A stretch of 64,000 nucleotides of DNA. It comes from Paramoeba atlantica (Eukaryota > Protista > Discosea). Shown piece after piece: positions 4,444 through 62,720 of the stretch. The notes under the pieces were generated by a model, which was not told where the DNA came from, did not search any database, and saw nothing but the letters and a program-made list of their open reading frames with translations. The translations under genes were made by a program, and so were the position numbers. The stretch is from NCBI GenBank assembly GCA_977017575.1, contig CDRNVI010000060.1, forward strand, positions 186,001-250,000, given 5' to 3'. Numbering within the stretch: position 1 is the stretch's first letter; each line of letters starts with the position of its first letter.

Positions 4444-5301
4444 CTACAGTACAGTAATTGTAACACATTTTGGAATTGGCCAAGACTGCACTTCCAAATC
4501 GCAGATATTTCCTTTCAAATTCAAATCTTCCATTGTTGCTGGTAAGGCGTCAAATGCTACTTTTCCCGTAAAAGCGTTGTTCCCAAGGGAAAGTGTACGC
4601 ATAAACGGCGGAAGGGAGCGCAGAACCAACTCACCATTCAACTTATTACCGGTCAAGTGCAAAACTGTAAGTTCTTTCGGGAGACAGGTTAAGTTTACAC
4701 TTCCAACAAAAAGATTTTCATGCAGAAAAAGTCTTTGAAGTTGTCCTGGGAGAAGCGTCAGGTCTAGATTCCCTGAAAAATCATTACGCGACACAGAAAA
4801 CAACCTCAATGGAGGAGGCAGTGAGGTCAAGTCAAGCATACCTGAAAATCTTGTACCAGATGAAAAAAGCTGTTCAACGAATTGTGGGAGGGAAGGGGCA
4901 TCGAAGGATCCGTATAAGGGGTTGTATTGTATGTTTAAAGAACTCAGTTTCGGGGGAAATGCGGAAACTGGAAGAGTTCCGCTGAGTTTATTATTTCCCA
5001 CACGAACAGTACACGTTGTGTGGGGTAGATACTCCCATGAGAGATTACCCTTCAGTGCCCTGGACGACCAATCAATATTGAGCACTTCATCATTGGAATT
5101 ACAAGCGACACCCGCCCACAAACATGCTTCTGTTTCCTTCCTCGTAATCAGTAACTTCGTCTCGAGATTCTCAATGAATTTTGCCATTTGCATGTCATGT
5201 GAGAGGATGGCTCCTCGCACTTTCCCTAGACGTGCATTCGTGCGAGTATTGGTCAAATCCGCCAGTGAAGCACTTCTGAGGATTAGTAATGAGATTGACA
5301 T
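4444..5301 (-). CDS. Leucine-rich repeat protein
   Basis: 285-aa ORF, LGKVRGAIL cap, ACLWAGVAC, ~7 LRRs. Confidence 0.93.
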   Translation of the reverse strand: MSISLLILRSASLADLTNTRTNARLGKVRGAILSHDMQMAKFIENLETKLLITRKETEACLWAGVACNSNDEVLNIDWSSRALKGNLSWEYLPHTTCTVRVGNNKLSGTLPVSAFPPKLSSLNIQYNPLYGSFDAPSLPQFVEQLFSSGTRFSGMLDLTSLPPPLRLFSVSRNDFSGNLDLTLLPGQLQRLFLHENLFVGSVNLTCLPKELTVLHLTGNKLNGELVLRSLPPFMRTLSLGNNAFTGKVAFDALPATMEDLNLKGNICDLEVQSWPIPKCVTITVL

Positions 5302-5489
5302 TAAATAATGGTAATAGAGTACACACAGTTATTAGTATGACAATATGTCGTAAAACAAAAATTAGTAAATGTTTAATTACTAGTAGTAAAACACGTTGAA
5401 AAATTCATGTTTTACACCTTACATTCTTTTCTTTTCGGAGTTCTACTTTTTTTACTAAAAAGTTTCAGATTACTATGTCGCACTACATC

Positions 5490-5810
5490 GGAGAATATTC
5501 CTCAGCAATCTGATAAGTGCTTCGTCTAACTAAGAGTTTTCTCACGGAAGACGAAGAAGTTCGGTTGTTGAAAACGTTTTTGCTGATTCGACAAACTGGC
5601 GTTGCTGTCGACGCAGCTCGCGTAGCAAACATTGCGAAAGGTATCAGAAAACAGCGACAAGCGGGACACACAGTGCTGAAAGGTGGCATGCTGAAGTTTT
5701 CGATTTCCTGGGCAAATTCTTGGATGCTCCGCAATGCCAGTATGGTGCGATGGGCAACTAAAACTCGAACTGTGACACCTATTGAAGTCGCGCAGACAGC
5801 CAATGTATTT
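5490..5810 (+). pseudogene. pogo/Tc5 transposase CENP-B-type HTH relic
   Basis: LTEDEEVRLL..LIRQTGVAV..ANIAK..LKFSISWANSWMLRN..RWATKTRT matches the CENP-B HTH pattern; no DDE domain follows. Confidence 0.6.
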
Positions 5811-6039
5811 TTTTCTCATCTACAGTGCGGGGCTTATTACGGGACGGGTTAAAGCACAGCGGTGCGCAGGCATATTCCCCCCTTCCTGGGGATTGGGTTT
5901 CAAAATGGTATGTGAGTGTTTACTTTAATACTTTTCATAGGAAAAACTGTCGATTATTTCTTAATCCGATATCTTTCTCTAGTGTGGAGAAACCACGAAA
6001 TGCAATTTACCAACGACGGTTGACTGGATGCTTTCCATT

Positions 6040-6475
6040 TCTTGATATATTCCACTTCTTCGTTTTGATCGATATTAGACTTTCGGTACTTTTTCTGCTT
6101 AGTTCATCCTTTCTTCCCCACGCAACGAGCGTACCGTTATCAAAATTTCATGCCCAGTATTCATGCCCTTTCCCTGCCGGTACTAAGACTGGAACTGTCC
6201 CCTTTTCTTGCTGAAGCGGTAGACGCCTCTCGATCCCTTGACCCCTCCCAGCCACTCCCGTGGAGTGAGTGCTTCCCTCCCAGCTTCTTTCTTGTCCACG
6301 TTTACCTTTGGCTAGGCATTATGCTGGGCGTTATGGCAACAAGTTATTTCTGTGAACTATACTCCTACATTGTCCTTGGATACACTACTACAGTTGTAGC
6401 TCTAATAGGCAAATTTGTCCCGGGATATTGGCATATTGGTGTGACAAACGCTAATACACCCGGAGCAGTCCACAC
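6040..6475 (+). repeat. Unspliced-looking member of the SL-headed repeat family (pyrimidine tract + AG acceptors)
   Basis: Pyrimidine tract, AG at 6077-78 and 6101-02, then TTCATCCTTTCTTCCCC and GCCGGTACTAAGACTGGAACTGTCCC homologous to 8252-8820 and 48235-49128; 3' part differs. Confidence 0.75.
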
Positions 6476-8251
6476 TGTGTAGTCAACACTGTGTAGTCAA
6501 CACTACTACTAGTGTTGTAGCTCTAATGCTAGTTTAGTTGTAGCTCTAATAGGCAAATTTGCCACGGGAACAACGAAGCCACTTCAAATAAGAGGTTTCA
6601 GAGGGGTGACTCCTGCCCCCAAGGGGGGACAGGGTTTAAGAGGGACGCCCCCGGGCGCTCCCCTTAAACTTCTACGGAGCTCCGACTTGGTGAAATCATT
6701 TTCGCAAAGAGATCCGGAATCCTCAATGTCCCTTGGATGGAACATGCTGGGCTAACATGACAAAGAGTTAGAAAGGGAGACCGGCGTTGGGCTGTCGTCG
6801 GTGATGGGGCGAGGCAACCCCAGCCTTCCGAAGTAAGGACTTCGAGCTAGCTGCAGGGATTCCTGTTCCTGTTTAACATCTTTTGGCGGGGTCGTTAACC
6901 ACATTCCGGGGGGTATAAGACGGCGTGGTAAGCAGGGGTCCAAAAAACTTTTAAAGTTTAATTTATAGCAAAAAAAAGAAATATTTTTATCACATACCCG
7001 TTTAACATACCTATACCTTGGATAACTTACCGGGGGGGGTATATTATTCTGGCCCGCGACACCTAATATACTCCCCCTCGTCCCACACATTTTCTTATGT
7101 AACGGTACAAAAGTCCAACCGTAAGATCACGTACCTTTTTAAAAAAAATGTTTCTATGCATTTTTAGATGCATTTTGATACGTTCTAGCATTTGGTACTA
7201 CGCGCGGTACATCTGTAGATACAGGTTCTAACAGTGGAAGGGTTTTTCTTCTCTTAGCTATTGCATTACCAGTCTACTTGACATACTTATACCTTGATAA
7301 CATACCTATACCTTGATAACATACCGGGGGGTGGTGTGTTAAATGGGTATGTGGTTTAGTACTATACATTGATGCTATAAGTAATTCAAAAACTTCGAAA
7401 ACTATAAATGGTGAAAAACAAATTTCGCGCCGCTTCGCGGGGCGTGTTTCTATCATGAGTTATATACGCGGGGTACCTTTCGGGGCTGCTTTTTATATAC
7501 TATCCCCCCTAGCAATCCGCTTTCTGCATTTGGGCTTGCTCCCCCTTCTTCCTCTACGGTCCTCCAAAGTCGATATCAAAAGCGATGTCCCATTCTTCTG
7601 ACACGGGTCGTTGCATGTATAAGAATGATTTATGTGGCGCGATAGTGTCTGAGGTACATGAATGGGTTGGAACCGCGGCCATTCCAAAAGCCAAAGTTTC
7701 GGATGTGTTCCGCGTGAAGTTAGAAGAAGTTTTTATCAGGGTCGTCAAGGTACCTGCGATAAAGACAGCAAAGAAGCCCTGGAAAACAGACTTAGACTGA
7801 TGTACAGTACAGTACAGTATGCAGACTCGCCGTACAGATCGGTGAAGGTCAGTGTGGATCAGAGATCTCTAGAGATTGATGAAGATAATTCTCGAACGCC
7901 CCAAAGGGACTACCTGCAGACTCTCCCTTTCAACAGTGGCGAAAATCTGTACAAAAATTAGTATCAAAAAAAAGCTTTCCGGCGTTGTTATTCTGAACGA
8001 TGCGTCAAAATTGCGCTTAAGTGGCCGGGTCAAACGGTCGCGCATAAGTGGGGGGGACAGTAAATAGGCAACCATTTTCGGTCTGCGGACTGGTACTTCG
8101 CTCGTCAGGTGGTCTATGGCAGGGAATGATCAAAGGTCAAGAGGGTTATGTGAGACATTTTTTCAAAAACCTATCTTCTTTGCTGTGGATGCGACACCAA
8201 AACGGGTTGCAGCTTGGCAAATATCCGTTGCACGTCCGAATATTATAAATG

Positions 8252-8820
8252 TGTTTTATCATGCACTTATAGTGCAGAGATTTGCTCACCATGTCCTTAT
8301 CCCGCATACGACGGGTGGATCATGTGAGGTTTCGTCCTCGCCGGAGGTGTGCGGGTGCGGAGAGCTGGCGTCCCAGGTGCAGAGAGCTCGGTTGTCATGT
8401 GCAGGTGCAGAGAGCCGGATGCGTAATCCCCATATTACAGTTTCGGGGGCAATCCGGGTGCAGAGAGCTGCGACAGAGCCGAGGTGCGGAGAGCTGGGCG
8501 ACCGCCAGGTGCAGAGAGCCGAGTCTCGTCGGCGGAGGACACGTCTAGTGGTCCTCAAGGAAGGCCACCGTGACGCATGGCCCTCTCGGAGAGGAAAAAG
8601 ACAAGTCGAAAAAAAGCCGAGAGGGGGAAGCACACTCACTCCAGGGGAGTGAGTCGGGGAGGGGTGAAGTGGTGAAAGCGCGTCCCCTGCTTCAGCGACA
8701 AGAGGGACAGTTCCGACCTTAGTGCCGGCCGGCAACGGGCATGAAAATACAGTAAGAGTATGCCCGTTGCCGGGGAAAGAAAGGATGAACAACAAGGTAC
8801 AGAAACTGTATCTACGTTAG
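8252..8820 (-). mobile_element. ~570-bp SINE-like retroposon headed by spliced-leader-like sequence
   Basis: Minus strand starts CTAACGTAGATACAGTTTCTGTACCTTGTTG|TTCATCC; colinear with 48235-49128; 13-bp stem GGCAACGGGCAT/ATGCCCGTTGCC; several CTCTCTGCACC repeats. Confidence 0.75.
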
Positions 8821-9189
8821 AATACGCAATATGGTAAGATCACGGAATTGACGTCGCTGAGCGTTGACCTTAGAACTGGAAGTAAATAACTCAATGGATT
8901 TTAAGCCAACTTTAGTTAATATTGCATTCTGAGCTTTCAGATAGCGAGGTTTCCTCTCAACTGCGTCGCGAGGGTGTTGCTGATATTTGTAGCCGATCTG
9001 GAGTACACGGGGACGAAACATGTGGTCTCCAACGAGCATACAGCACATAGCTGTTATAATAATTATTAATAGAGCGCTTGGATAATTAAGAATTATCACA
9101 ACCTACGCGGACAGTGCGGGGTAGGGAATGGTAGAAGTGGGTGGTGGAAAGTGGGGGCGGTGGGGCGTGGGTGGGATGTGAGATCAAGA

Positions 9190-9218
9190 GGTGTGTGTGT
9201 GTGCGTGTGTGTGTGTGA
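9190..9218. repeat. (TG)n microsatellite
   Basis: gtgtgtgtgtgtgcgtgtgtgtgtgtg. Confidence 0.9.
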
Positions 9219-9534
9219 GGATTTGGGGGTCGTCGGTGATGGGGCGCGTTGTATGTGTGTGCGGTGGTAAGTGGTAGTATCATCTGAGCAGCAGATCATC
9301 TGACGAGTGCCGCTTTTAATTTTCAATGTGCAACATATGCCCGAATTCACGTTCGGAATGGGTTTCGGAAAAATGAATTTTATTCAGCGCTAAACAACTA
9401 ATGCGGAGATGCTTGTACTTTTTTGGAAATTGATGTCTTTTCACACATAACCAGAATACTGGATTGGCCGGATCCCGCACAAACCACCACTCCATCAAGA
9501 CCTCACTATCCATACTTTTCGGCATTAGGATGTA

Positions 9535-14967: not shown

Positions 14968-15825
14968 CTACAATACAGTAATTGTAACACATTCTGGAAT
15001 TGGCCAAGACTGCACTTCCAAATCGCAGATATTTCCTTTCAAATTCAAATCTTTCATTGTTGCTGGTAAGGCGTCAAATGCTACTTTTCCCGTAAAAGCG
15101 TTGTTCCCAAGGGAAAGTGTACGCATAAACGGCGGAAGGGAGCGCAGAACCAACTCACCATTCAACTTATTACCGGTCAAGTGCAAAACTGTAAGTTCTT
15201 TCGGGAGACAGGTTAAGTTTACACTTCCAACAAAAAGATTTTCATGCAGAAAAAGTCTTTGAAGTTGTCCTGGGAGAAGCGTCAGGTCTAGATTCCCTGA
15301 AAAATCATTACGCGACACAGAAAACAACCTCAATGGAGGAGGCAGTGAGGTCAAGTCAAGCATACCTGAAAATCTTGTACCAGATGAAAAAAGCTGTTCA
15401 ACGAATTGTGGGAGGGAAGGGGCATCGAAGGATCCGTATAAGGGGTTGTATTGTATGTTTAAAGAACTCAGTTTCGGGGGAAATGCGGAAACTGGAAGAG
15501 TTCCGCTGAGTTTATTATTTCCCACACGAACAGTACACGTTGTGTGGGGTAGATACTCCCATGAGAGATTACCCTTCAGTGCCCTGGACGACCAATCAAT
15601 ATTGAGCACTTCATCATTGGAATTACAAGCGACACCCGCCCACAAACATGCTTCTGTTTCCTTCCTCGTAATCAGTAACTTCGTCTCGAGATTCTCAATG
15701 AATTTTGCCATTTGCATGTCATGTGAGAGGATGGCTCCTCGCACTTTCCCTAGACGTGCATTCGTGCGAGTATTGGTCAAATCCGCCAGTGAAGCACTTC
15801 TGAGGATTAGTAATGAGATTGACAT
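14968..15825 (-). CDS. Leucine-rich repeat protein (paralog of 4444-5301)
   Basis: ORF 14968-15873; start placed at the ATG at 15825 by homology with copy A (MSISLL). Confidence 0.9.
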   Translation of the reverse strand: MSISLLILRSASLADLTNTRTNARLGKVRGAILSHDMQMAKFIENLETKLLITRKETEACLWAGVACNSNDEVLNIDWSSRALKGNLSWEYLPHTTCTVRVGNNKLSGTLPVSAFPPKLSSLNIQYNPLYGSFDAPSLPQFVEQLFSSGTRFSGMLDLTSLPPPLRLFSVSRNDFSGNLDLTLLPGQLQRLFLHENLFVGSVNLTCLPKELTVLHLTGNKLNGELVLRSLPPFMRTLSLGNNAFTGKVAFDALPATMKDLNLKGNICDLEVQSWPIPECVTITVL

Positions 15826-16099
15826 TAAATAAATAATGGAAATACAGTAAATAAATAATGGTAATACACACACAATTATTAGTGTGAGAATAAGTTGTAA
15901 AACAAAAATTAGTAAATTTTTAATTCCTAGTAGTAAAACATGTTATAATTGTTCTAGTACCATGTTATAATTCAGGTTTTACACCTTGCCTTCTTTTCTT
16001 TTCTTTTCTTTTTTCGGAATTCTATTTTTTTTAGAAAAAAGTTTCAGATTACTACATGTCGCACTACATCGGAGAATGTCGCACTACATCGGAGAAGCG

Positions 16100-16420
16100 A
16101 TATTGCTCAGCAATCTGATAAGTGCTTCGTCTAACTAAGAGTTTTCTCACGGAAGACGAAGAAGCTCGGCTGTTAAAAACTTTGTTGCTGATTCGACAAA
16201 CTGGCGTTGCCGTCGGCGCAGCTCGTAGCCAACATTGCGAAAGGTATCAGAGAACAGCGACAAACGGGACACACAGTGCTGAAAGGTGGCATGCTGAAGT
16301 TTTCGATTTCCTGGGCAAATTCTTGGATGCACCGCAATGCCAGTATGGTGCGATGGGCAACTAAAACTCGAACTGTGACACCTATTGAAGTCGCGCAGAC
16401 AGCCAATGTATTTTTTTCTC
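16100..16420 (+). pseudogene. pogo CENP-B HTH relic, frameshifted (copy of 5490-5810)
   Basis: Same sequence with a frameshift near 16227. Confidence 0.6.
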
Positions 16421-16649
16421 ATCTACAGTGCGGGGCTTATTACGGGACGGGTTAAAGCACAGCGGTGCGCAGGCATATTCCCCCCTTCCTGGGGATTGGG
16501 TTTCAAAATGGTATGTGAGTGTTTACTTTATAAGTTTAATACTTTTTATAAGAAAAACTGTCGATTATTTCTTAATCCGATATCTTTCTCTAGTGTGGAG
16601 AAACCACGAAATGCAATTTACCAACCTCGGTTGACTGGATGCTTTCCAT

Positions 16650-17100
16650 TTCTTGATATATTCCACTTCTTCGTTTTGATCGATATTAGACTTTCTGTAC
16701 TTTTTCTACTTAGTTCATCATTTCTTCCCCACGCAACGAGCGTAACTTTGTCAAAATTCCATGCCCGTTATTTCCACACTGTATTTTTATGCCCTTTTCC
16801 TGCCGGTACTAAGACTGGAACTGTCCCCATTTCTCGCTGAAGCGGGGGACGCCTCTCGATCCCTTGACCCCTCCCAGCCACTCCCGTGAAGTGAGTACTT
16901 CCCTCCCAGCTTCTTTCTTGTCCACGCTTATCTTTGGCTAGGCATCATGCAGGGCGTCATGGCAAGAAGTTATTTCCCTGTACTATACTCCTACATTGTC
17001 CTTGGATACACTACTACAGTTGTAGCTCTAATAGGCAAATTTGTCCCGGGATATTGGCATATTGGTGTGACAAACGCTAATACACCCGGAGCAGTCCACA
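16650..17100 (+). repeat. Unspliced-looking member of the SL-headed repeat family (copy B)
   Basis: CTTAG|TTCATC with AG at 16712-13; homologous to 6040-6475. Confidence 0.75.
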
Positions 17101-21314: not shown

Positions 21315-23201
21315 TCACAACTTCGCCTCCACCCGGTTCGACAACCCCACCAACCCCGGCAGCACCTCCCCTTGCAACAGCCCCAACGAGGCCCCCCCTC
21401 CCGTGCTCACATGGCTCAGCCCCTCCCCCACCCCCGCCCCCTGCACCGCCGCCACCGTGTCCCCTCCCCCCACCACACTCACCACCCCCCTCTCCCGTGT
21501 CGCCGCCGCCAGGGCCCTGGCAACCCCCACGGTGCCGTACGCAAACGGCGCCTCCTCGAACCTCCCCACGGGCCCGTTCCACACCACCGTGCGGGCCTCC
21601 CGCAGCAGCCCCTCTACCCGCTCCAGGGTCCGGGGGCCGATATCGAACACGGCCGAGCCTTTGGGCACGACCAGCCCTTTGGTCGGTCCCACCCTACCTG
21701 TGGCCCCGTCCCGTACCACGTGATCCACCGGGAGAATGATTTTATTCCCCCAGCGCGGCTCCGCGAGGAGTTGGCCCGCGACCCTCACGGGATCGTTTGC
21801 GGGGTTGTTATCTTTGCGTTGGGGGAAATAGCTTTTCCCCATGTCATGGCCCAGAGCGGATAGAAAAGGGAAACTCATGGCGCCCCCAATGAAGAGGGCG
21901 TCGACCCGGTTGAGTAAGTGTTGGATGAGTTTGACTTTGTCGGTGACCTTGGCGCCCCCGAGGAGGGCGAGTAGGGGGCGTCGGGGGTTGTGAAGGATTT
22001 TCTGGAACGCGGTGAGTTCCTTCGCGAGGAGGAGACCGGCGGCCCCGAGGCCGAGGGTGCGGGGGAGCTCGCACAGGGAGGCCGCGGTGCGGTGGGAGAC
22101 CCCGAAGGCGTCGTTGATGAAGACGGTGCCGTGGGCGGCTAGTACCGTCGCGAAGGCCTGACGCGCCCGGGGGGCCTTGGAGGCCTCCCCGGGGTGGAAC
22201 CGGAGGTTTTCGAACAGAACCACCGAGCCTGGGGGGACACGGGAGAGGTGGGCGGTGGCCGCAAGAGGGTCGGGGACAAAACTCACGACGGGGGGGTTGG
22301 TTGTTGTTGTTGTGGTTTTTGAGGAAGCCTCCCTTGGATGGGCGGCGTCCTCCCCAGGGTGCGAACCCCAAGCCTCGGTGAGGGCTTTTTGTAACACGGG
22401 GACAAGGGGTTGAAGCGAGTAGGCCCGGGAGTAGCCACCTGATTTCGGGGGTTGTCCCCAGTGCGCGAGGAGGACAAGGTAACGGGGTTGCTGGCGGAGG
22501 ATGTGGAGCAGCGTGGGGAGGGTGGAACGAATACGGAAATCGTTCATCACGACCTCGTGGGCGGCGTCCATGGGGACGTTGTAGTCCACACGGAGGAGAA
22601 CGCGCTGGTTGTGGAGGTTGACGTCGGTGATGCTCAGCTTCTTTTTGAGGTAATCTTTCGCGGCGAACGTGGAGCGGAAGAGGTCGGGTATGGGGGAGTA
22701 GGCACCTGTGTGGGGAGTGCGAGTTCGAGACCCCGGGATCCCTGTGGGGTGAAGCGGCTTAAAGCTGATGGCTATTCGTTCGCTACATGAGCCGTTCTGT
22801 GGAGGTGCGTTTTCCGGCGGGGCCGCACGTAGTGCGTAGAGTTGTGGGGTTGGGAACCGCGTGCGAGCGAGTAGCACGCGATCGGGCTCACGGGCAACAG
22901 ACTTTAGAATTTCATCGTCGAATATATCACAGAGAAAACTGATTTTTTTTTCGCTGACGTGTCTGTCACCTGCATGGGACTTTGATCCACCTGGAAGATG
23001 CGAGTCTTCAAAAAAATGCACAGCGCTCCCATTCGCGTGTAAAATTTTCCAGCTGTCTCGTTCGCACTCAACGTAGGGATGCAATGTGTATTGCATAGAA
23101 CGGCACATGAGCGGTTTATGCTGGACAGATGAGTCCTTTGCACTGGGACTGTGCATGCTGTTATAAAGACGAATAAGAAATAAAATCGCTGTGCGATACA
23201 A
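21315..23201 (-). CDS. PGK: Phosphoglycerate kinase with N-terminal PAS-like domain and PTS1 (-AKL), probably glycosomal
   Basis: RVDYNVP, ENLRFH, NDAFG..HR, GGAKVTDK, WNGPVG, GGGDT, HVSTGGGAS; N-terminal HPYVECERDSWKILHANGSAVHFF is PAS-like; ends EAKL*. Confidence 0.95.
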   Translation of the reverse strand: MYRTAILFLIRLYNSMHSPSAKDSSVQHKPLMCRSMQYTLHPYVECERDSWKILHANGSAVHFFEDSHLPGGSKSHAGDRHVSEKKISFLCDIFDDEILKSVAREPDRVLLARTRFPTPQLYALRAAPPENAPPQNGSCSERIAISFKPLHPTGIPGSRTRTPHTGAYSPIPDLFRSTFAAKDYLKKKLSITDVNLHNQRVLLRVDYNVPMDAAHEVVMNDFRIRSTLPTLLHILRQQPRYLVLLAHWGQPPKSGGYSRAYSLQPLVPVLQKALTEAWGSHPGEDAAHPREASSKTTTTTTNPPVVSFVPDPLAATAHLSRVPPGSVVLFENLRFHPGEASKAPRARQAFATVLAAHGTVFINDAFGVSHRTAASLCELPRTLGLGAAGLLLAKELTAFQKILHNPRRPLLALLGGAKVTDKVKLIQHLLNRVDALFIGGAMSFPFLSALGHDMGKSYFPQRKDNNPANDPVRVAGQLLAEPRWGNKIILPVDHVVRDGATGRVGPTKGLVVPKGSAVFDIGPRTLERVEGLLREARTVVWNGPVGRFEEAPFAYGTVGVARALAAATRERGVVSVVGGGDTVAAVQGAGVGEGLSHVSTGGGASLGLLQGEVLPGLVGLSNRVEAKL

Positions 23202-33843: not shown

Positions 33844-35526
33844 CTAGTATGCCACCTTCTCGCACTTTCGAATATCGTAAGTATCTTTACGCAACCGGGT
33901 GGCCACAATACTCCACAAGTCCCACGGAGAACATCCATCTGTTTCGAGCGAACGAATCGAAAGAAAATCCGACCACAATGGTTTATTTCTCTCCTGTCTC
34001 GCACTTTTCAGCGATTCCTCCATTTCGGACATCCAATCCCTGTTCCTAGCACGAGAACGCATCAAACTATTCCTGGAGGCAATCACCTCATCAAATGATC
34101 GGCCCAAATGCTGTGTAATCCGCGATGAAAGATTAGTCACGGAGTTTAAAAGTGCCTCCGTTAACTTTAAATCTTTACGGTGCAAAAGTGCGCACAAACG
34201 AGCCTCCCCGACGTGTTTCCACCACGGCTTTTCTTCGCCTCCTACATGTCCGGACTCTTCATTAGGCTGCCTCAACCTCTCATCTCCTCCTTCTCGAAAA
34301 CTTTCCTTACACAACGCGTATGCAACCAACAACTGCAACTCCGCGGAGGCATCAAAACGGTGATCCAGATCCTCATGACGTAGCAACTTATTGCGTGCAA
34401 AATAAACCTGCGACCGCAGCACTGTGTTAAAGTAGAAACAGGAATCTTCAAAGTGCTTGTTATCGTATGCTCGATCGCTGGCGTATCCCTTTGTGACCAA
34501 ACGACACTCCGTGGAGGTTGCACGTGTCCAAACCGGAAGAAGTAAATCCCCATCTAAATAAGATGTGCTCTGCTCCGTATGTCTCATCACCTTTTCAGTC
34601 CCCGTGATATCATACTCCATGTAGGGAAGGCGAAATTTGAGCAAGCTGTACTCGGGACGCATAATACGATGCCAGTGTCTTTGAGCCGCCATATTGTCCC
34701 GGACATGTTCCTCAAAATTAGAGCACTCTAAGGACCCCGAGCGGATGTCAGAGATAAACAACAGCGGGGTAAATGCCATCGCGGCCTCCGCCAGCGACGT
34801 GATCCCAGACGGAAGAGCAAGCGGTTCTTCAGCGATTTTCGCCACATTTTTCGTACCGCTTTGGGTTGTGTAAGTCTCCTCCATCTTTGTCTCCTCTTCC
34901 CCATTCGTCAACTCAGCACCCATCCTTGTCTCTGCACTCCCCCTTCTCCCATACCCTTCCTCTACACAACAGCGGTACAAAAACCGCAACGCCGGTGTTT
35001 TCACCATCCGTTTCGCCGCAATCCCATACGCCACCTCATTCGTAAAAAACTGCTGTCGAAGCACCAAACCCGAAGCACCCACCCGGTTTCCCCCCCTTTC
35101 CTCTTTTTCACCCTTCTCCTCTGCACCCTTTCCTCTCCATCGCTTCGCTCTTCTGTGGGTTTCCTCCCCCTCCCCCCCCTCGGGGGTCTCCGCGAAACGG
35201 TTTAACCCCGCATCAAACGGACACGGGTCGACCAGTTCGAATTGGGTCCGGTCGTACATCTCAAGTAAGGCCTTTACGTGAGTCCCCGGGGCGGCCCCCG
35301 CGTAGACGACCCAGTAGTTCTTTCTTGGGTTAGCGTACAACGAGAGGAAGGCGATCTCACTCATCAGGAGTTTGCGCTGTCCCCAGTGTGTGGTGGACTT
35401 GGGGGCGTGGGTGCGACGGGCGTAGGGGGCGGCGGGGGTGGAGGGGTCGAGACGGAACGGGACGAGCGCGGTGGAGGGGTGGTAGAGGAAGGGAGGGGGG
35501 GGAGAAAGGGGGAGAGGGGTGGTCAT
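33844..35526 (-). CDS. VP39-like cap ribose 2'-O-methyltransferase (poly(A) polymerase regulatory-subunit family; trypanosome MTr2/MTr3 cap-4 type)
   Basis: HWGQRKLLMSEIAFL, VYAGAAPGTH, LVDP, LFISDIRS, SLLKFRLPY, LPVWTRATSTECRL. Confidence 0.9.
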   Translation of the reverse strand: MTTPLPLSPPPPFLYHPSTALVPFRLDPSTPAAPYARRTHAPKSTTHWGQRKLLMSEIAFLSLYANPRKNYWVVYAGAAPGTHVKALLEMYDRTQFELVDPCPFDAGLNRFAETPEGGEGEETHRRAKRWRGKGAEEKGEKEERGGNRVGASGLVLRQQFFTNEVAYGIAAKRMVKTPALRFLYRCCVEEGYGRRGSAETRMGAELTNGEEETKMEETYTTQSGTKNVAKIAEEPLALPSGITSLAEAAMAFTPLLFISDIRSGSLECSNFEEHVRDNMAAQRHWHRIMRPEYSLLKFRLPYMEYDITGTEKVMRHTEQSTSYLDGDLLLPVWTRATSTECRLVTKGYASDRAYDNKHFEDSCFYFNTVLRSQVYFARNKLLRHEDLDHRFDASAELQLLVAYALCKESFREGGDERLRQPNEESGHVGGEEKPWWKHVGEARLCALLHRKDLKLTEALLNSVTNLSSRITQHLGRSFDEVIASRNSLMRSRARNRDWMSEMEESLKSARQERNKPLWSDFLSIRSLETDGCSPWDLWSIVATRLRKDTYDIRKCEKVAY

Positions 35527-47370: not shown

Positions 47371-48234
47371 CATGGGTCGCCCGGTGTCAGGATAACAAGA
47401 CACTAAACAACTAGGGCATGACACCTCATTCTCCCGGAGGAAGCAACTCGGGTGTCAACATGCTGCAGTTGAGCCTAGGCTCTCGCGCTGTAGATTTGCT
47501 CCCCGCGTGGGGCACCCGCACTGCTACCTACGCGGAAAGTGAGGAGGCCACATCTGTTGGGAGACAAACGGCCCGGACCCAACAACAACAACATTTCATG
47601 AACCACTATTTTCATGAAATGGTTCATGAACCAGTAATAACTTAGTAAGAGGAAGGGCACCCTCCCTCTCAGGAGAATCTGGCTGAGCTGCTTAGCCGAC
47701 ATTCATTGAGGATCATTTATTAGATGAGGCCCATGCCTACACTACTAGCACATATTACCGGCGCAACGATGTTTACTCAATAGCTGTATACAAAAACAAA
47801 GTGTGCACATTTGATATTGGACCTTGTTGTTTCTTTATTTTGCATTGTAACTGAGGAAACATCCGTGAATTTCGACGTAAGAGTGGTGAATGAGCTTTCT
47901 AAACTATACTCAGTGAGGAAAGGTTCCAAGCTAATGCAAGACATACAGAAACGAAATATAGAAACTTACGTGAGGTCCGGTCTATTTCCGAGCGAAAATT
48001 TTGTATGTCTGCTAAGGAGGAGGATGGCAGCATCTTGACTGTGAAAAGCCTGGATGACGTTGGCTGACGTACTGGTTGCGTGAGGAGGTGGTACAGGATA
48101 AATTACAACACTTAAAAGGGACTATGCTTTCGTCTCGAATAGCGAAGGCCGTTCCAAATTGATAGCGTCACAGAACACCTCAGTGTCTTTCGGTCTCAAC
48201 AATATCACAAAATTTGCTGATCGTAAAGCTTAAT

Positions 48235-49128
48235 ACAGTTTCTGTACTTTGTTCGTACTTTTTCCTTAGTTACCGTATACCCCCCCCAGTAATAAATACT
48301 TAATTTAGAATCGATTTTGGACCCAAATGGCCAAATCTCTGTTACTGGGGGGTATGCTTTTTTGGTGGGAAAAGACCTTTTTTGTTCATGGGTGCATTGA
48401 TTTTCTGCCCAGACAACCCCGCAACTACGCCATTCGCTCCCGCGCAACCGCCCTCACCCAGCTCAGCGACCCCCACCCGCTCAACCCCCCCCCCTCCAAC
48501 CACCCTCCCGAGCTAAATCTCTGTTACTGGGGCAGCTCAAAAATGGCCGAATCTCTATTACTGGGGGGGTCTATTACTGGGGGGGTATACGGTAATCCCT
48601 TCTTTCCCCGGCAACGGGCATACTCTTACTGTATTTTTATGCCCGTTGCTGGCCGGCATTAAGATCGGAACTGTCCCTCTTGTCGCTGAAGCAGGGGACG
48701 CGCCTTCACGCCTTCACCCTTCCCCGACTCACTCCCCCGGAGTGAGTGTGCTTCCCCCTGTCGGCTTTCTTCGACTCGTTTTTTCCTCTCCGAGAGGGCC
48801 ATGCGTCACGGTGGCCTCCCTTGAGGACCACTAGGCGTGTCCTCCGCCGACGAGACTCTCGGCTCTCTGCACCTGGCGGTGGCCCTGCTCCCCGCACCTC
48901 GACTCTGTCAGCGCTCTCTGCACCCGGATTGCCCCCGAAACTGTAATATGGGGATTGCGCATCCGGCTCTCTGCACCTGCACATGACAACCGAGCTCTCT
49001 GCACCTGGGACGCCAGCTCTCCGCACCCGCACACCTCCGGCGAGGACGAAACCTCACATGATCCACCCGTCGTATGCGGGATAAGGACATGGTGAGCAAA
49101 TCTCTGCACTATAAGTGCATGATCAAAC
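48235..49128 (+). mobile_element. SL-headed SINE-like retroposon interrupted by a MITE
   Basis: ACAGTTTCTGTACTTTGTTCG at 48235-55; after removing 48273-48592 it is colinear with 8252-8820. Confidence 0.75.
48273..48592. mobile_element. 320-bp MITE with CCGTATA TIRs (Tc2/pogo-type ends), TA TSD
   Basis: TA|CCGTATACCCCCCCCAGTAATA ... TATTACTGGGGGGGTATACGG|TA. Confidence 0.9.
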
Positions 49129-50480
49129 TACAAATACAGTACTGGTACGTATTTTTGATCGCAGGATGCACTAAGGTCTTCCCCTGTACTCCGTACCTCG
49201 GTATCCTGAGAAATGTTTGCATTTCCAACTATCGCAATAAAAGGCTCATTCAGTACTCTCGATCGGGTAAGTAAGGCGTCTGGATTCCAATAGTAGTTCT
49301 TCGAAGGATTGTGGTGAATGTAATCAAGCAATTCCGCTGAGTTCCAAATTTCAACTTCTGCAGGCACATGTTGGATAGGAGACGACAGCATTACTTCAAT
49401 TGCTGATCTAGAAGCACTGACCGAAGGTTTGACAGCCTCCACTTGTGAAGCACGAAGAAAACCATCGACTACAGGAAGCATCGTACACGCCTGCGTCACA
49501 TGGCTCATGTACCCATCCGCGCTCCTCACGCCGGATTCGTCCAGTTTTCTAGCCTCGGAATCCGTCATTTCCACAGACCCTTTCAAAGCCTCACGCGAGG
49601 GTAAATCAACACCCATTGCATGAACCAGCACACAAGCCCACAACCACACCCGCAGTGGGGGGCTATTTGTTCTTAGGCAAAGCTCACGGTACATCCCCTC
49701 CCATATCGGCATCCATTCCGCACAGGATTTCAATTTTCGGTTCAAAAACGATTTCGCATTTTCCGTTTTTTCATCCTCAGCCAAGGAACTCGAATTTCCA
49801 GACTTTTTCTCATGATCATTTGACATGTCTCGCAACATTGTTGTTGTTGTCATGATATTACTCCCAATTGGGTAGGCCACTTTGAGCCAACGCAACCATC
49901 CATCATAGACGGAGCGTCGCGTCTTGCATGTCTCGATCGCAATCCACCACGCAAGTCGGAGGCGCTGGTCGTTTTTAAAAACAGTGCGCGTGATGGAGGA
50001 ATGAATCTCATGCGTGAGTTCTACAATATTCGTCGTGCATACACAAAGCGAGTAGGGAAGCGCGGCAAGCAGGATCAGGGAAGGGGTGGGCTTGTTTTCC
50101 TCCAGGGTGGAAAACGGTGCTTCACCACATTGCCCTCTAGGAAAAGAAGATTCATCTTCACAACCTTTCACAGGGTTACGTAGGATAAGATGGTATTCCG
50201 GGATACACAGAGGGGAGCGTGCACCAGGTACTCCTCTGGTTTCGGCACATTTTTCTCTTTTTTTTGCTTTCACCATTTCAAGTGCGCTATGCAACACAAC
50301 GCCTTTGGAGAGTGCCCATAAGAGGTAGGAATGTGGTGACACCAGTGGGGAGGTGGAACGGTTGGCTGGAGAAACGGATAAGGAGGATGGCGTTCTGTTC
50401 GCTCGAGAGGGGGAGGACACACATGAAAACGTACTATTCGGGGGCATGGCCGTACGAATTGAACGGGAAGCAAATCTCAT
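49128..50480 (-). CDS. Probable divergent SET-domain (LSMT/SETD3-like) protein
   Basis: LWALSKGVVLH, LRLAWWIAIE..S.YDGWLRWL, VWLWACVLV, MLPVVDGF resemble SET motifs; the canonical NH motif is absent. Confidence 0.45.
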   Translation of the reverse strand: MRFASRSIRTAMPPNSTFSCVSSPSRANRTPSSLSVSPANRSTSPLVSPHSYLLWALSKGVVLHSALEMVKAKKREKCAETRGVPGARSPLCIPEYHLILRNPVKGCEDESSFPRGQCGEAPFSTLEENKPTPSLILLAALPYSLCVCTTNIVELTHEIHSSITRTVFKNDQRLRLAWWIAIETCKTRRSVYDGWLRWLKVAYPIGSNIMTTTTMLRDMSNDHEKKSGNSSSLAEDEKTENAKSFLNRKLKSCAEWMPIWEGMYRELCLRTNSPPLRVWLWACVLVHAMGVDLPSREALKGSVEMTDSEARKLDESGVRSADGYMSHVTQACTMLPVVDGFLRASQVEAVKPSVSASRSAIEVMLSSPIQHVPAEVEIWNSAELLDYIHHNPSKNYYWNPDALLTRSRVLNEPFIAIVGNANISQDTEVRSTGEDLSASCDQKYVPVLYL

Positions 50481-61604: not shown

Positions 61605-62720
61605 ATGAATAAGTTAGGTATCTTACCCATGAATGTCATCTTACTTTTTGTTTTCTCTCTAGACGATATTTTATCCTGCAATTCTATCATGTACGGCATT
61701 ACCAGAGAGCATCTCACAGATTTTTTTCTTGAGCTACAGAGAGCAAGTCCTCTTGTCGCCACGGACAATGATCTCAGACGTCTTAGCTCTTCCTTAGCTA
61801 TGTGCGCTTTGAACTGCACATGGGAGCAACTGTATGATTTACAGCCCATGTGGATTGCTCCCGAAACTCCGCCTCTATCCATCAGGACTCTCCGCGATGA
61901 CGTTGGCCGCATCGCTGATCTTTGCCGCTCTCCTGCTTTAATGAATTCGAAACTTCGTTTCAAGCATGGGGTATCTTGGATGTCTGACGTGACATGCATG
62001 ATGGACGTCACGACAATCCCATGTCGTGCAAGGAAACCGCGGGACGTATGGGACGAAGCCTCTCAGGAAATGAGAAAAAAAGATGCGACCTACTCCGGCA
62101 GGCACAGGGAACACTGTTTTAAAGTGGAGTTCTGGCTTACGCTTGCCGGAGTCCTTATTTTTTTTCGCGGACCCGTTCCGGGCAGTGTACATGATGCGAA
62201 AATTTATAAAGAAATAACCATGCACGGAACATTTCTTTTTGACCATCATGAAGATGAAATGTTTTTGGCGGATCTAGGATACGTGGGTTGCAACCACTGT
62301 TTTGTTCCATTCAAGACACCACGCAAAGGTTGCCTTGATGAACACCAGGATCGGTTCAACCGCATCCTTGGATTTGTTTGGATTGGATCCAACCGCATGC
62401 ATTCTTGGATTAGTTCAAGAAGCGAGCGTTGTTTCGCTCGTTTCGAAAAATTTCGTTTTTTTCATGGAACGGACCACGATATTACGTGGGTAAAGGATGC
62501 CGTTCAGATTGTATCTGTTGCAGTGTATGGTTTGCTTGCATCAGAACCGCAATGCGACTTTGATAGTGAAATAAATGTACATTTACAAAATATCGATGAC
62601 TCATCTTTTTGTTGGTGTAGCAAAGGGTGTGGTTTAGTCAAACCGATTGATGAACGGAGGGATTGGCTCAAAGAACACATATACCATATGGGATACATGT
62701 ATGTTCCCAAGAAACCATAG
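61605..62720 (+). CDS. DDE_Tnp_4-type (Harbinger/ISL2EU/IS5-ISL2-like) transposase, apparently intact
   Basis: MMDVTTIP, YSGRHREHCFK, PGSVHD, LADLGYVG, PFKTPR, RSERCFARFEKF; a ~48-bp tandem repeat at 61549-61645 obscures the start. Confidence 0.88.
   Translation: MNKLGILPMNVILLFVFSLDDILSCNSIMYGITREHLTDFFLELQRASPLVATDNDLRRLSSSLAMCALNCTWEQLYDLQPMWIAPETPPLSIRTLRDDVGRIADLCRSPALMNSKLRFKHGVSWMSDVTCMMDVTTIPCRARKPRDVWDEASQEMRKKDATYSGRHREHCFKVEFWLTLAGVLIFFRGPVPGSVHDAKIYKEITMHGTFLFDHHEDEMFLADLGYVGCNHCFVPFKTPRKGCLDEHQDRFNRILGFVWIGSNRMHSWISSRSERCFARFEKFRFFHGTDHDITWVKDAVQIVSVAVYGLLASEPQCDFDSEINVHLQNIDDSSFCWCSKGCGLVKPIDERRDWLKEHIYHMGYMYVPKKP

What the first reader, a model, noticed from the sequence alone, without database searches (positions are those of the whole stretch)
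8252..8820. SINE-like retroposon capped with a spliced leader joined exactly at a trans-splice AG
Seen: the minus strand reads CTAACGTAGATACAGTTTCTGTACCTTGTTG|TTCATCCTTTC. The last 20 nt before the junction match the conserved euglenozoan SL 3' half (ACAGTTTCTGTACTTTATTG) at 18/20, and CTAACG echoes the SL 5' end. Related repeats at 6040-6475 and 16650-17100 have no SL; they show a pyrimidine tract and CTTAG|TTCATC at the same junction. Known: SL trans-splicing adds the leader after an AG. Inference: the family is transcribed, trans-spliced, reverse-transcribed and reinserted, so the SL acts as the element's 5' head. I know of no described SL-headed SINE family in kinetoplastids. No clear poly(A) tail or TSD is visible.
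Basis: partly seen in the sequence, partly recalled or inferred. Interest (0 to 1): 0.85.

Follow-up and report, generated by a model that had tools for sequence, protein, structure and literature searches.

The report
Spliced-leader-headed retroposon copy, freshly re-spliced
A 564-base non-coding jumping element in this kinetoplastid-type genome begins with a DNA copy of the last 24 bases of the cell's own mRNA leader, joined exactly where a splice acceptor sits in its sister copies, so it was copied back into DNA from a trans-spliced RNA.

Summary
Window 8250-8813 (minus strand) is a 564-nt insert. An empty site in a paralogous 10.6-kb unit fixes its ends: no target duplication, one target base lost.

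- **Leader part.** The first 24 nt match nt 15-38 of this organism's own 38-nt spliced leader (SL) exactly. I read the SL from true SL RNA genes, whose intron starts GTATGAGAAGCT.
- **Correction 1.**
- **Correction 2.** Most sister copies are not SL-less. Among 60 copies with an intact body start, 45 have a 5'-truncated SL, then a 14-16-nt spacer (GTAC, pyrimidine tract, AG), then the body. 13 have the SL fused directly at that AG, as here.
- **Recurrence.** Direct fusions also occur in other subfamilies that have different spacers. Within this subfamily they nest among spacer-bearing copies of the same haplotype.

My reading is that a host trans-splice at the spacer AG of an element transcript was followed by reverse transcription and insertion. 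The copying enzyme is probably an R2/CRE-type element, which I did not test. How the usual SL-plus-spacer head is kept stays open. No RNA run was available.

This scan has already noted SL-headed retroelements on other DNA of this genome. I found no published report. The closest parallel is dinoflagellate SL relics.

The parts
8790..8813 (-). SL-derived head: 24 nt identical to nt 15-38 of the organism's 38-nt SL exon
   Evidence: The start at 8813 is fixed by the empty site.
8250..8789 (-). Non-coding body of the retroposon (540 nt), from TTCATCC to GCATGATAAAACACA
   Evidence: At least 368 BLAST candidates in the genome, many 94-100% identical. Copy ends. No Pfam match for its mechanical ORFs. 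No Rfam family.
8729..8773 (-). Conserved 14-bp hairpin near the 5' end of the body
   Evidence: Folded. Kept in all subfamilies, with a C:G to A:T compensatory change.
8707..8714 (-). Body segment GGAACTGT, able to pair with SL nt ACAGTTTC (8802-8809)
   Evidence: Paired in the MFE fold. Pairing is kept across subfamilies through A/G changes opposite U. Function unknown.
8354..8518 (-). Six reiterations of CTCTCYGCACC, a motif like the 3' terminal CTCTGCAC
   Evidence: 11 matches in the window, all in the two copies, against 0.01 expected.
8250..8279 (-). 3' terminus (CTCTGCACTATAAGTGCATGAT, then AAAAC with 0-3 further bases); no poly(A)
   Evidence: The terminus motif is shared by all subfamilies.
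8814..8820 (-). Target flank CTAACGT, not part of the SL
   Evidence: Present in the empty sites L072, L075, L076 and L082.
48233..48269 (+). Head of a second, older copy: SL-like 22 nt (2 mismatches at its 3' end) plus the spacer GTACTTTTTCCTTAG
48270..48595 (+). Inverted-repeat (MITE-like) insertion that splits the second copy between spacer and body
   Evidence: The same arrangement occurs in L060.
48596..49132 (+). Body of the second copy, 94.8% identical to the first
6086..6277 (+). Old diverged relative: spacer GTAC..TAG (6086-6102), then about 175 nt of 5' module. Its duplicate is at about 16697-16896.

Best explanation
Window 8250-8813 (minus strand) is a young copy of a roughly 540-nt non-coding, non-autonomous retroposon of a kinetoplastid-type genome.

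**The family's usual head** is a 5'-truncated copy of the host SL, followed by a 14-16-nt spacer (GTAC, pyrimidine tract, AG), followed by the body.

**This copy.** It, or its immediate RNA parent, arose when an element transcript was trans-spliced by the host at the spacer's AG. That put a new SL directly on the first body base. The RNA was then reverse-transcribed and inserted, with 5' truncation at SL nt 15, no target duplication and loss of one target base.

**Shown**
- The insert's exact ends.
- The SL identity.
- The exact absence of the spacer.
- The recurrence of that absence in several lineages.
- The lack of any SL in the target.

**Inferred**
- The RNA steps.
- The copying enzyme. 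An R2/CRE-type (RLE) element acting in trans fits the missing TSD and missing poly(A), and it fits earlier notes of this scan. I did not test it.
- How the usual SL-plus-spacer head is kept identical to the host SL.
For: 1. **SL identity.** 24 of 24 to the exon of true SL RNA genes.
2. **Empty site.** It fixes the insert at 564 nt and shows no SL in the target.
3. **Census of 60 copies with an intact body start.** 45 carry a spacer ending in AG, 13 carry a direct SL join, 1 has SL+AG, and 1 is truncated inside the spacer. Nothing else is seen upstream.
4. **Direct joins in other subfamilies.** They fall at the same point despite different spacers: 4-6 cases of SL joined to CCCTTCC, 2 of SL joined to CTCATCC, and 2 of SL joined to TTCATCT.
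5. **Recurrence.** Direct-join copies L031 and L032 share all informative sites with spacer copies L033, L034 and L041. L035 shares them with L048 and L058. The spacer was therefore lost more than once.
6. **Independent insertions.** The flanks of L031, L032 and L035 are unrelated.
7. **Relic junctions.** There are 11 genomic sites where an SL is joined to TTTCTGTACCTTGTTG, that is, a new SL added at the AG inside an older DNA-encoded SL (control 0).
8. **Acceptor shape.** The spacer is a 9-nt pyrimidine run followed by AG, the standard kinetoplastid acceptor layout (established knowledge).
Against: - No RNA data. The runs that hold the stretch look like DNA, and the one guessed RNA run holds none of it.
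- Spacer-bearing copies outnumber direct joins about 3:1 in this subfamily and about 11:1 in subfamily C. Most templates were therefore not spliced at this AG.
- The SL ends in G and the acceptor ends in G, so the junction is ambiguous by one base.
- A few junctions break the AG rule: SL+AG+body twice, SL joined to ATTTTGCTAG once, and SL 3'-end reiterations such as those in L008 and L024.
- SL heads of these elements are almost never full length: 16-31 nt, with only 2 full-length SL+GTAC sites in the genome. A freshly added 38-nt SL would therefore have to be truncated each time.
- The partner LINE was not examined here.
Confidence: 0.72

Rival explanations
1. The spacer was lost by a DNA-level or reverse-transcriptase-level deletion or slippage, not by splicing. 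The SL in this copy would then be the inherited DNA-encoded head of its parent.
For: - Small head variants exist: loss of TTG (L052, L053), loss of one G (L036), SL+AG+body (L040, C45:32491), and SL joined inside the spacer (C19:19973).
- The SL head length here (24 nt) lies in the range of the spacer copies.
- Two direct-join copies share a mutated SL (CCCCGCTG). If they are independent insertions, the head is passed on through DNA.
Against: The exact GT..AG-bounded loss is by far the commonest non-spacer form. It recurs in at least four lineages with spacers of different length and sequence. Random deletion predicts scattered end points.
Confidence: 0.12
2. The head derives from an SL RNA gene or SL RNA (exon plus the first intron bases GTA), captured once by template switching as in snRNA-headed SINEs or U6/L1 chimeras. 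The direct-join form would arise when the 15-nt GT..AG stretch is removed like a mini-intron from the element's own RNA.
For: - The SL is followed by GTA in both the SL RNA gene and the element.
- The SL part is identical across subfamilies whose 5' modules are only 74-83% alike.
- The SL can pair with a conserved body segment.
Against: - Beyond GTA the spacer and body show no likeness to the SL intron.
- No Rfam family matches.
- A 14-17-nt intron is far below known cis-intron sizes, and kinetoplastids have very few cis-introns (PMC11613528).
- The relic junctions at the SL-internal AG need a second SL, so trans-splicing is involved.
Confidence: 0.08
3. The SL part is target DNA: the family inserts into SL sequences, as CRE/SLACS/CZAR elements do in SL RNA genes.
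For: - SL heads rarely exceed 28-31 nt. That is about the part of the SL lying downstream of the CRE-clade insertion point at nt 11/12 (own knowledge; PMC12278014 for the site specificity).
- Some copies sit inside the SL heads of other copies (L036).
Against: - The empty site for this copy has no SL.
- Upstream flanks are unrelated and are not SL nt 1-10.
- The SL lies at the element's 5' end, not beyond its 3' end.
Confidence: 0.02
4. Ordinary DNA duplication of a repeat that happens to contain an SL-like motif.
For: The window does contain a 10.6-kb segmental duplication.
Against: - The paralogous unit lacks the insert.
- Copies have sharp common ends and unrelated flanks.
- The motif equals the host SL exactly.
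Confidence: 0.01

Closest known systems
Dinoflagellate retrogenes with DinoSL relics (PMC5585692, PMC6050394, PMC12014239)
   Same: A DNA copy of the host SL sits at the 5' end of retroposed sequences. Tandem relic SLs form when a new SL is added at an AG inside the older, DNA-encoded SL; 11 such junctions occur here.
   Different: Here the carrier is a non-coding mobile-element family in a kinetoplastid-type genome, not cellular genes. There is no poly(A) tail, the SL is 5'-truncated, and most copies carry an extra acceptor-like spacer between SL and body.
CRE clade (SLACS, CZAR, CRE1/2) of trypanosomatids (PMC12278014, PMC4728078)
   Same: Retroelements of kinetoplastids that are tied to the SL sequence. 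They are RLE-type elements, which typically leave no regular TSD.
   Different: CRE elements are autonomous, end in poly(A) and insert at one position of SL RNA genes, so the SL there is target DNA. Here the element is non-coding and dispersed, its target has no SL, and the SL is part of the inserted copy.
Non-autonomous partners of trypanosomatid LINEs (RIME/ingi, NARTc/L1Tc, SIDER) with the Pr77 head (PMC1874656, PMC8190864)
   Same: Short non-coding hitch-hikers with a conserved 5' module shared with autonomous elements.
   Different: Pr77 is an internal promoter that gives unspliced transcripts. Those elements have poly(A) tails and TSDs, and no SL in their DNA.
SINEs with snRNA-derived heads and U6/L1 chimeras (own knowledge; 10.1101/2025.02.02.635956 for LINE-1 recombination with other RNAs)
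   Same: A small nuclear RNA sequence fused to the 5' end of a retroposed sequence.
   Different: Those fusions come from template switching onto the whole small RNA. Here only the exon, which is the part transferred by splicing, is present, and the join obeys the AG rule.

Membership tests
LINE-dependent non-autonomous retroposon (SINE-like) | Short, non-coding, many dispersed copies with common ends and unrelated flanks | tested here: met
   At least 368 candidates, with 30 copies inspected. No protein family or RNA family matches.
LINE-dependent non-autonomous retroposon (SINE-like) | Insertion shown by an empty site | tested here: met
   a 564-nt insert, with the paralogous unit empty.
LINE-dependent non-autonomous retroposon (SINE-like) | 3' end shared with an autonomous LINE of the same genome | not tested
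Earlier notes s1-369756, s1-392757 and s1-377386 claim it.
Classical SINE | Head derived from tRNA, 7SL or 5S RNA with an internal pol III promoter | tested here: not met
   No such Rfam match even at E up to 5.
CRE/SLACS/CZAR site-specific retrotransposons | Inserted in the SL RNA gene exon at a fixed position | tested here: not met
   The target is an unrelated repeat with no SL.
CRE/SLACS/CZAR site-specific retrotransposons | Encodes reverse transcriptase and a restriction-like endonuclease | tested here: not met
   No Pfam domain in its ORFs.
SL RNA gene or pseudogene | SL exon followed by the SL intron (GTATGAGAAGCT...) | tested here: not met
   The exon is joined to TTCATCC here. In sister copies it is joined to GTAC plus a pyrimidine tract, which is unlike the intron beyond GTA.
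SL-relic retrocopies (dinoflagellate type) | Host SL encoded in DNA at the 5' end of a retroposed sequence, joined at an AG acceptor | tested here: met
SL-relic retrocopies (dinoflagellate type) | Poly(A) tail at the 3' end | tested here: not met
   The 3' end is ...GCATGATAAAAC with 0-3 further bases.

The most novel reading that the evidence does not exclude
The SL head is a working module of an R2/CRE-related LINE-SINE system in a kinetoplastid. The elements would use the host's trans-splicing, or template switching onto SL-bearing RNAs, to define and renew their 5' ends. That would explain why the SL part stays identical to the host SL while the adjacent spacer and body diverge. The system could be an evolutionary link to the SL-gene-specific CRE/SLACS elements of trypanosomatids.
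Probability: 0.3. Interest if true: 0.8.

Novelty: new variant of a known kind. Interest (0 to 1): 0.62.

Why it matters
- **A natural tag.** It gives direct DNA evidence that reverse transcriptases in a kinetoplastid-type cell copy trans-spliced RNA back into the genome. RT-mediated intron loss in Kinetoplastea has so far been argued only indirectly (PMC11613528).
- **A new 5'-end strategy.** Mobile elements living inside polycistronic transcription can use the host's mRNA 5'-end machinery. This differs from the Pr77 internal promoter of ingi/L1Tc and from co-transcription of SLACS with SL genes.
- **An internal before-and-after pair.** The family holds spacer-bearing and AG-joined copies of the same haplotype, which makes the mechanism testable with RNA reads alone.

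Tried and rejected
- **Rfam.** Nothing at gathering thresholds over the window and nothing credible at E up to 5 over the element. There was no HDV-like or hammerhead ribozyme, tRNA, 7SL or SL family.
- **RNA evidence.** The single run search gave four runs of unrecorded type that behave as DNA, and one guessed RNA run with none of the stretch. The laid contigs showed only DNA forms: the empty site, spacer-bearing copies and tandem copies.
- **Organism identity.** The PGK ORF gave Perkinsela at 43% as its best named hit, and no species.
- **Metagenome scan** for SL+GTAC: no match.
- **Papers.** Searches for the SL sequence, SL with retrotransposon or bodonid, Bodo saltans, SL relics, and SL with SINE or template switching found no report of SL-headed mobile elements in kinetoplastids.
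- **Pfam on ORFs next to other SL heads.** Only weak LsmAD and RT_RNaseH hits, plus one RVT_1 ORF that a related element has interrupted. None is shown to be the partner.
- **Partner LINE.** I did not try to obtain more through another tool, so the partner LINE's 3' end and the flanks of the other direct-join copies were not examined.
- **The ORF in L068 downstream of the element.** Rejected as the element's own gene: the alignment shows the element ends before it.

Full report
**What is there**

The core 13-mer ACAGTTTCTGTAC occurs twice in the window against 0.03 expected. It occurs 811 times in the 45.7-Mb assembly, against 2 for the reversed control.

Listing what follows the SL 3' end across the genome revealed the true SL RNA genes. 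There the exon end CTGTACCTTGTTG is followed by GTATGAGAAGCTTCGAAC, the intron start typical of kinetoplastids (own knowledge). These genes lie in 1,454-bp tandem units. The exon is AACTTTAACGATAAAGATACAGTTTCTGTACCTTGTTG, 38 nt. Window 8790-8813 equals exon nt 15-38 exactly. Pfam hits in the window (PGK, a kinetoplastid PH-like domain) and a best named PGK relative in Perkinsela fit a kinetoplastid-type organism. I could not name the species.

**Ends of the insert**

Both flanks recur 10.6 kb upstream on the same contig, separated by a single base. They also recur in three further copies of the repeat in which the element sits.

- Empty site: ...tattctaacgt c tttataat...
- Filled site: ...tattctaacgt, then AGATACAG..., then ...GATAAAACACA, then tttataat...

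The insert is therefore 8250-8813, or 564 nt: 24 nt of SL plus a 540-nt body. There is no target duplication and one target base is lost. A DNA contig in public runs shows the same joint.

The target holds no SL, so the SL arrived with the insert.

**The family**

The body has at least 368 BLAST candidates in the genome, many 94-100% identical, with sharp common ends and unrelated flanks. It ends in ...CTCTGCACTATAAGTGCATGATAAAAC plus 0-3 further bases, with no poly(A). It has no protein or RNA family match. It folds well below shuffled controls (z = -4.15). It also holds six reiterations of a motif like its 3' terminus.

Related subfamilies share several features:
- the SL part;
- a spacer;
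- a 250-nt 5' module, 74-83% alike;
- a 14-bp hairpin with one compensatory change;
- the 3' terminal motif.

Their middle parts differ.

**The key correction**

In most copies the SL part is not joined to the body. A spacer lies between them: GTAC, a pyrimidine run, then AG. In this subfamily the spacer is GTACTTTTTCCTTAG.

I took a census of every site with the intact body start, with one base 15 nt upstream restricted to non-A:

| Upstream of the body start | Sites (of 60) |
|---|---|
| Spacer ending in AG | 45 |
| SL joined directly (two with a variant SL 3' end) | 13 |
| SL+AG | 1 |
| Truncated inside the spacer | 1 |

No other upstream sequence occurs.

The same census for subfamily C, whose spacer is GTACATTTTGCTAG:

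| Upstream of the body start | Sites (of 65) |
|---|---|
| Spacer forms | 56 |
| Direct joins | 4 |
| Direct join, SL one T short | 1 |
| SL+AG | 1 |
| SL joined inside the spacer | 1 |
| Other | 2 |

Direct joins also occur before CTCATCC and before the B-type body.

Within this subfamily, direct-join copies L031 (this one) and L032 carry the same informative sites as spacer copies L033, L034 and L041. L035 carries those of L048 and L058. Their flanks are unrelated. Exact loss of the GT..AG-bounded spacer has therefore happened repeatedly.

**Reading**

A pyrimidine run followed by AG is the standard kinetoplastid trans-splice acceptor (established knowledge). The simplest account has three steps:
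1. Element transcripts are sometimes trans-spliced at the spacer AG.
2. The spliced RNA, now with an SL directly on TTCATCC, is reverse-transcribed and inserted.
3. The 5' end is truncated within the SL.

Independent support comes from 11 genomic sites where a complete SL 3' end is followed by TTTCTGTACCTTGTTG. That is the junction expected if a new SL is added at the AG inside an older DNA-encoded SL. It is the relic pattern known from dinoflagellate retrogenes (PMC5585692, PMC6050394).

The missing TSD and missing poly(A) fit an R2/CRE-type (RLE) enzyme better than an APE-type enzyme. Earlier notes of this scan report such an element with the same head and ends.

**What stays open**

- Spacer-bearing copies are the majority, so most templates kept a DNA-encoded SL plus spacer.
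- The SL part is identical in subfamilies whose neighbouring sequence has diverged. It is therefore either renewed or selected.
- SL heads in these elements are 16-31 nt, with a mode of 25-29. Only two full-length SL+GTAC sites exist. Other SL-headed, ORF-bearing elements of this genome carry 36-38 nt.
- The SL can pair over 8 bp with a conserved body segment.
- Possible causes are a 5' end set by a start or cleavage site inside the head, template switching onto SL-bearing RNAs, or truncation at integration. I cannot tell them apart without RNA data.
- A few junctions do not obey the AG rule (SL+AG+body, SL 3'-end reiterations), so some slippage also occurs.

**Rivals**

- Deletion rather than splicing is possible, but it predicts scattered end points.
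- An SL-RNA-gene-derived head fails, because nothing beyond GTA resembles the intron.
- A target-derived SL and plain DNA duplication are both excluded by the empty site.

The copies at about 6103 and 16714 are one old relative inside the 10.6-kb duplication. A possible decayed SL (TTTCTGTAC) lies just upstream in the second. The alignment gives p about 0.03 there and about 0.16 for the first, which is weak.

The second SL site of the window (48235) heads an older copy. It has a slightly mutated SL and an intact spacer, and a MITE-like insertion lies between spacer and body.

**Novelty**

I found no paper describing SL-headed mobile elements in kinetoplastids. The scan itself has already flagged SL-headed retroelements on other pieces of this genome.

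New in this report:
- the empty site;
- the true SL gene as the reference for the SL;
- the spacer versus direct-join census;
- the recurrence of exact spacer loss;
- the relic junction count.

Noticed in passing
window 5000-6460 and 15524-17085; also G000:C60:183173-183983: A tandem segmental duplication of about 10.6 kb, 94-100% alike. The unit upstream of the window lacks the retroposon, so the insertion is younger than the duplication.
   Followed up: partly
window 48270-48595: A 326-bp element with terminal inverted repeats (TTACCGTATACC, a C run, then AGTAATA) sits inside the second retroposon copy. The same nested arrangement occurs on contig C51 (L060).
   Followed up: no
L005-L007, L015-L017, L021, L024 (contigs C1, C2): Many other SL sites are full-length SL (36-38 nt) directly preceded by a poly(A) run and followed by long ORFs. 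An RT_RNaseH-like ORF ends just upstream in L016 and L012. These look like head-to-tail retroelements of another class.
   Followed up: partly
L029/L030 (G000:C2:553054-553097): Two SL copies lie in inverted orientation and overlap to form a palindrome.
   Followed up: no
L001-L004 (G000:C1:9759-25049): A tandem repeat of 5,093 bp in which each unit holds an SL copy flanked on both sides by the same 30-nt sequence.
   Followed up: no
G000:C11:274166 and C24:3415: An SL exon plus the first 12 intron bases, followed by AAAAAGGGGC. These are truncated or interrupted SL RNA gene copies.
   Followed up: no
G000:C26:87658 and C42:164962: Direct-join copies whose SL 3' end reads CCCCGCTG instead of CCTTGTTG (three T-to-C changes). 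If they are separate insertions, the head is inherited through DNA.
   Followed up: no
L036 1400-1560; L047; L055/L056: Retroposon copies often lie head to tail or inside each other. In L036 a B-type copy sits in the SL head of an A-type copy, with GATACAGTTT on both sides. In L055/L056 a 20-nt linker joins a 3' end to the next SL head, and the same joint is seen in public DNA contigs.
   Followed up: partly
L068 1-1527: An RVT_1 reverse-transcriptase ORF is interrupted at about 1490 by a B-type SL-headed retroposon.
   Followed up: partly
window 7850-8249 and 8821-9220: Both flanks of the insert are themselves repeats (13 and 71 candidates in the genome), so the element landed in older repeat DNA.
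   Followed up: partly
window 61605-62720 (+); 21315-23201 (-); 33844-35526 (-): A DDE_Tnp_4 (Harbinger-type) transposase ORF; a 628-aa phosphoglycerate kinase with a long N-terminal extension; and an ORF with a poly(A) polymerase regulatory subunit-like (PARP_regulatory) domain.
   Followed up: no
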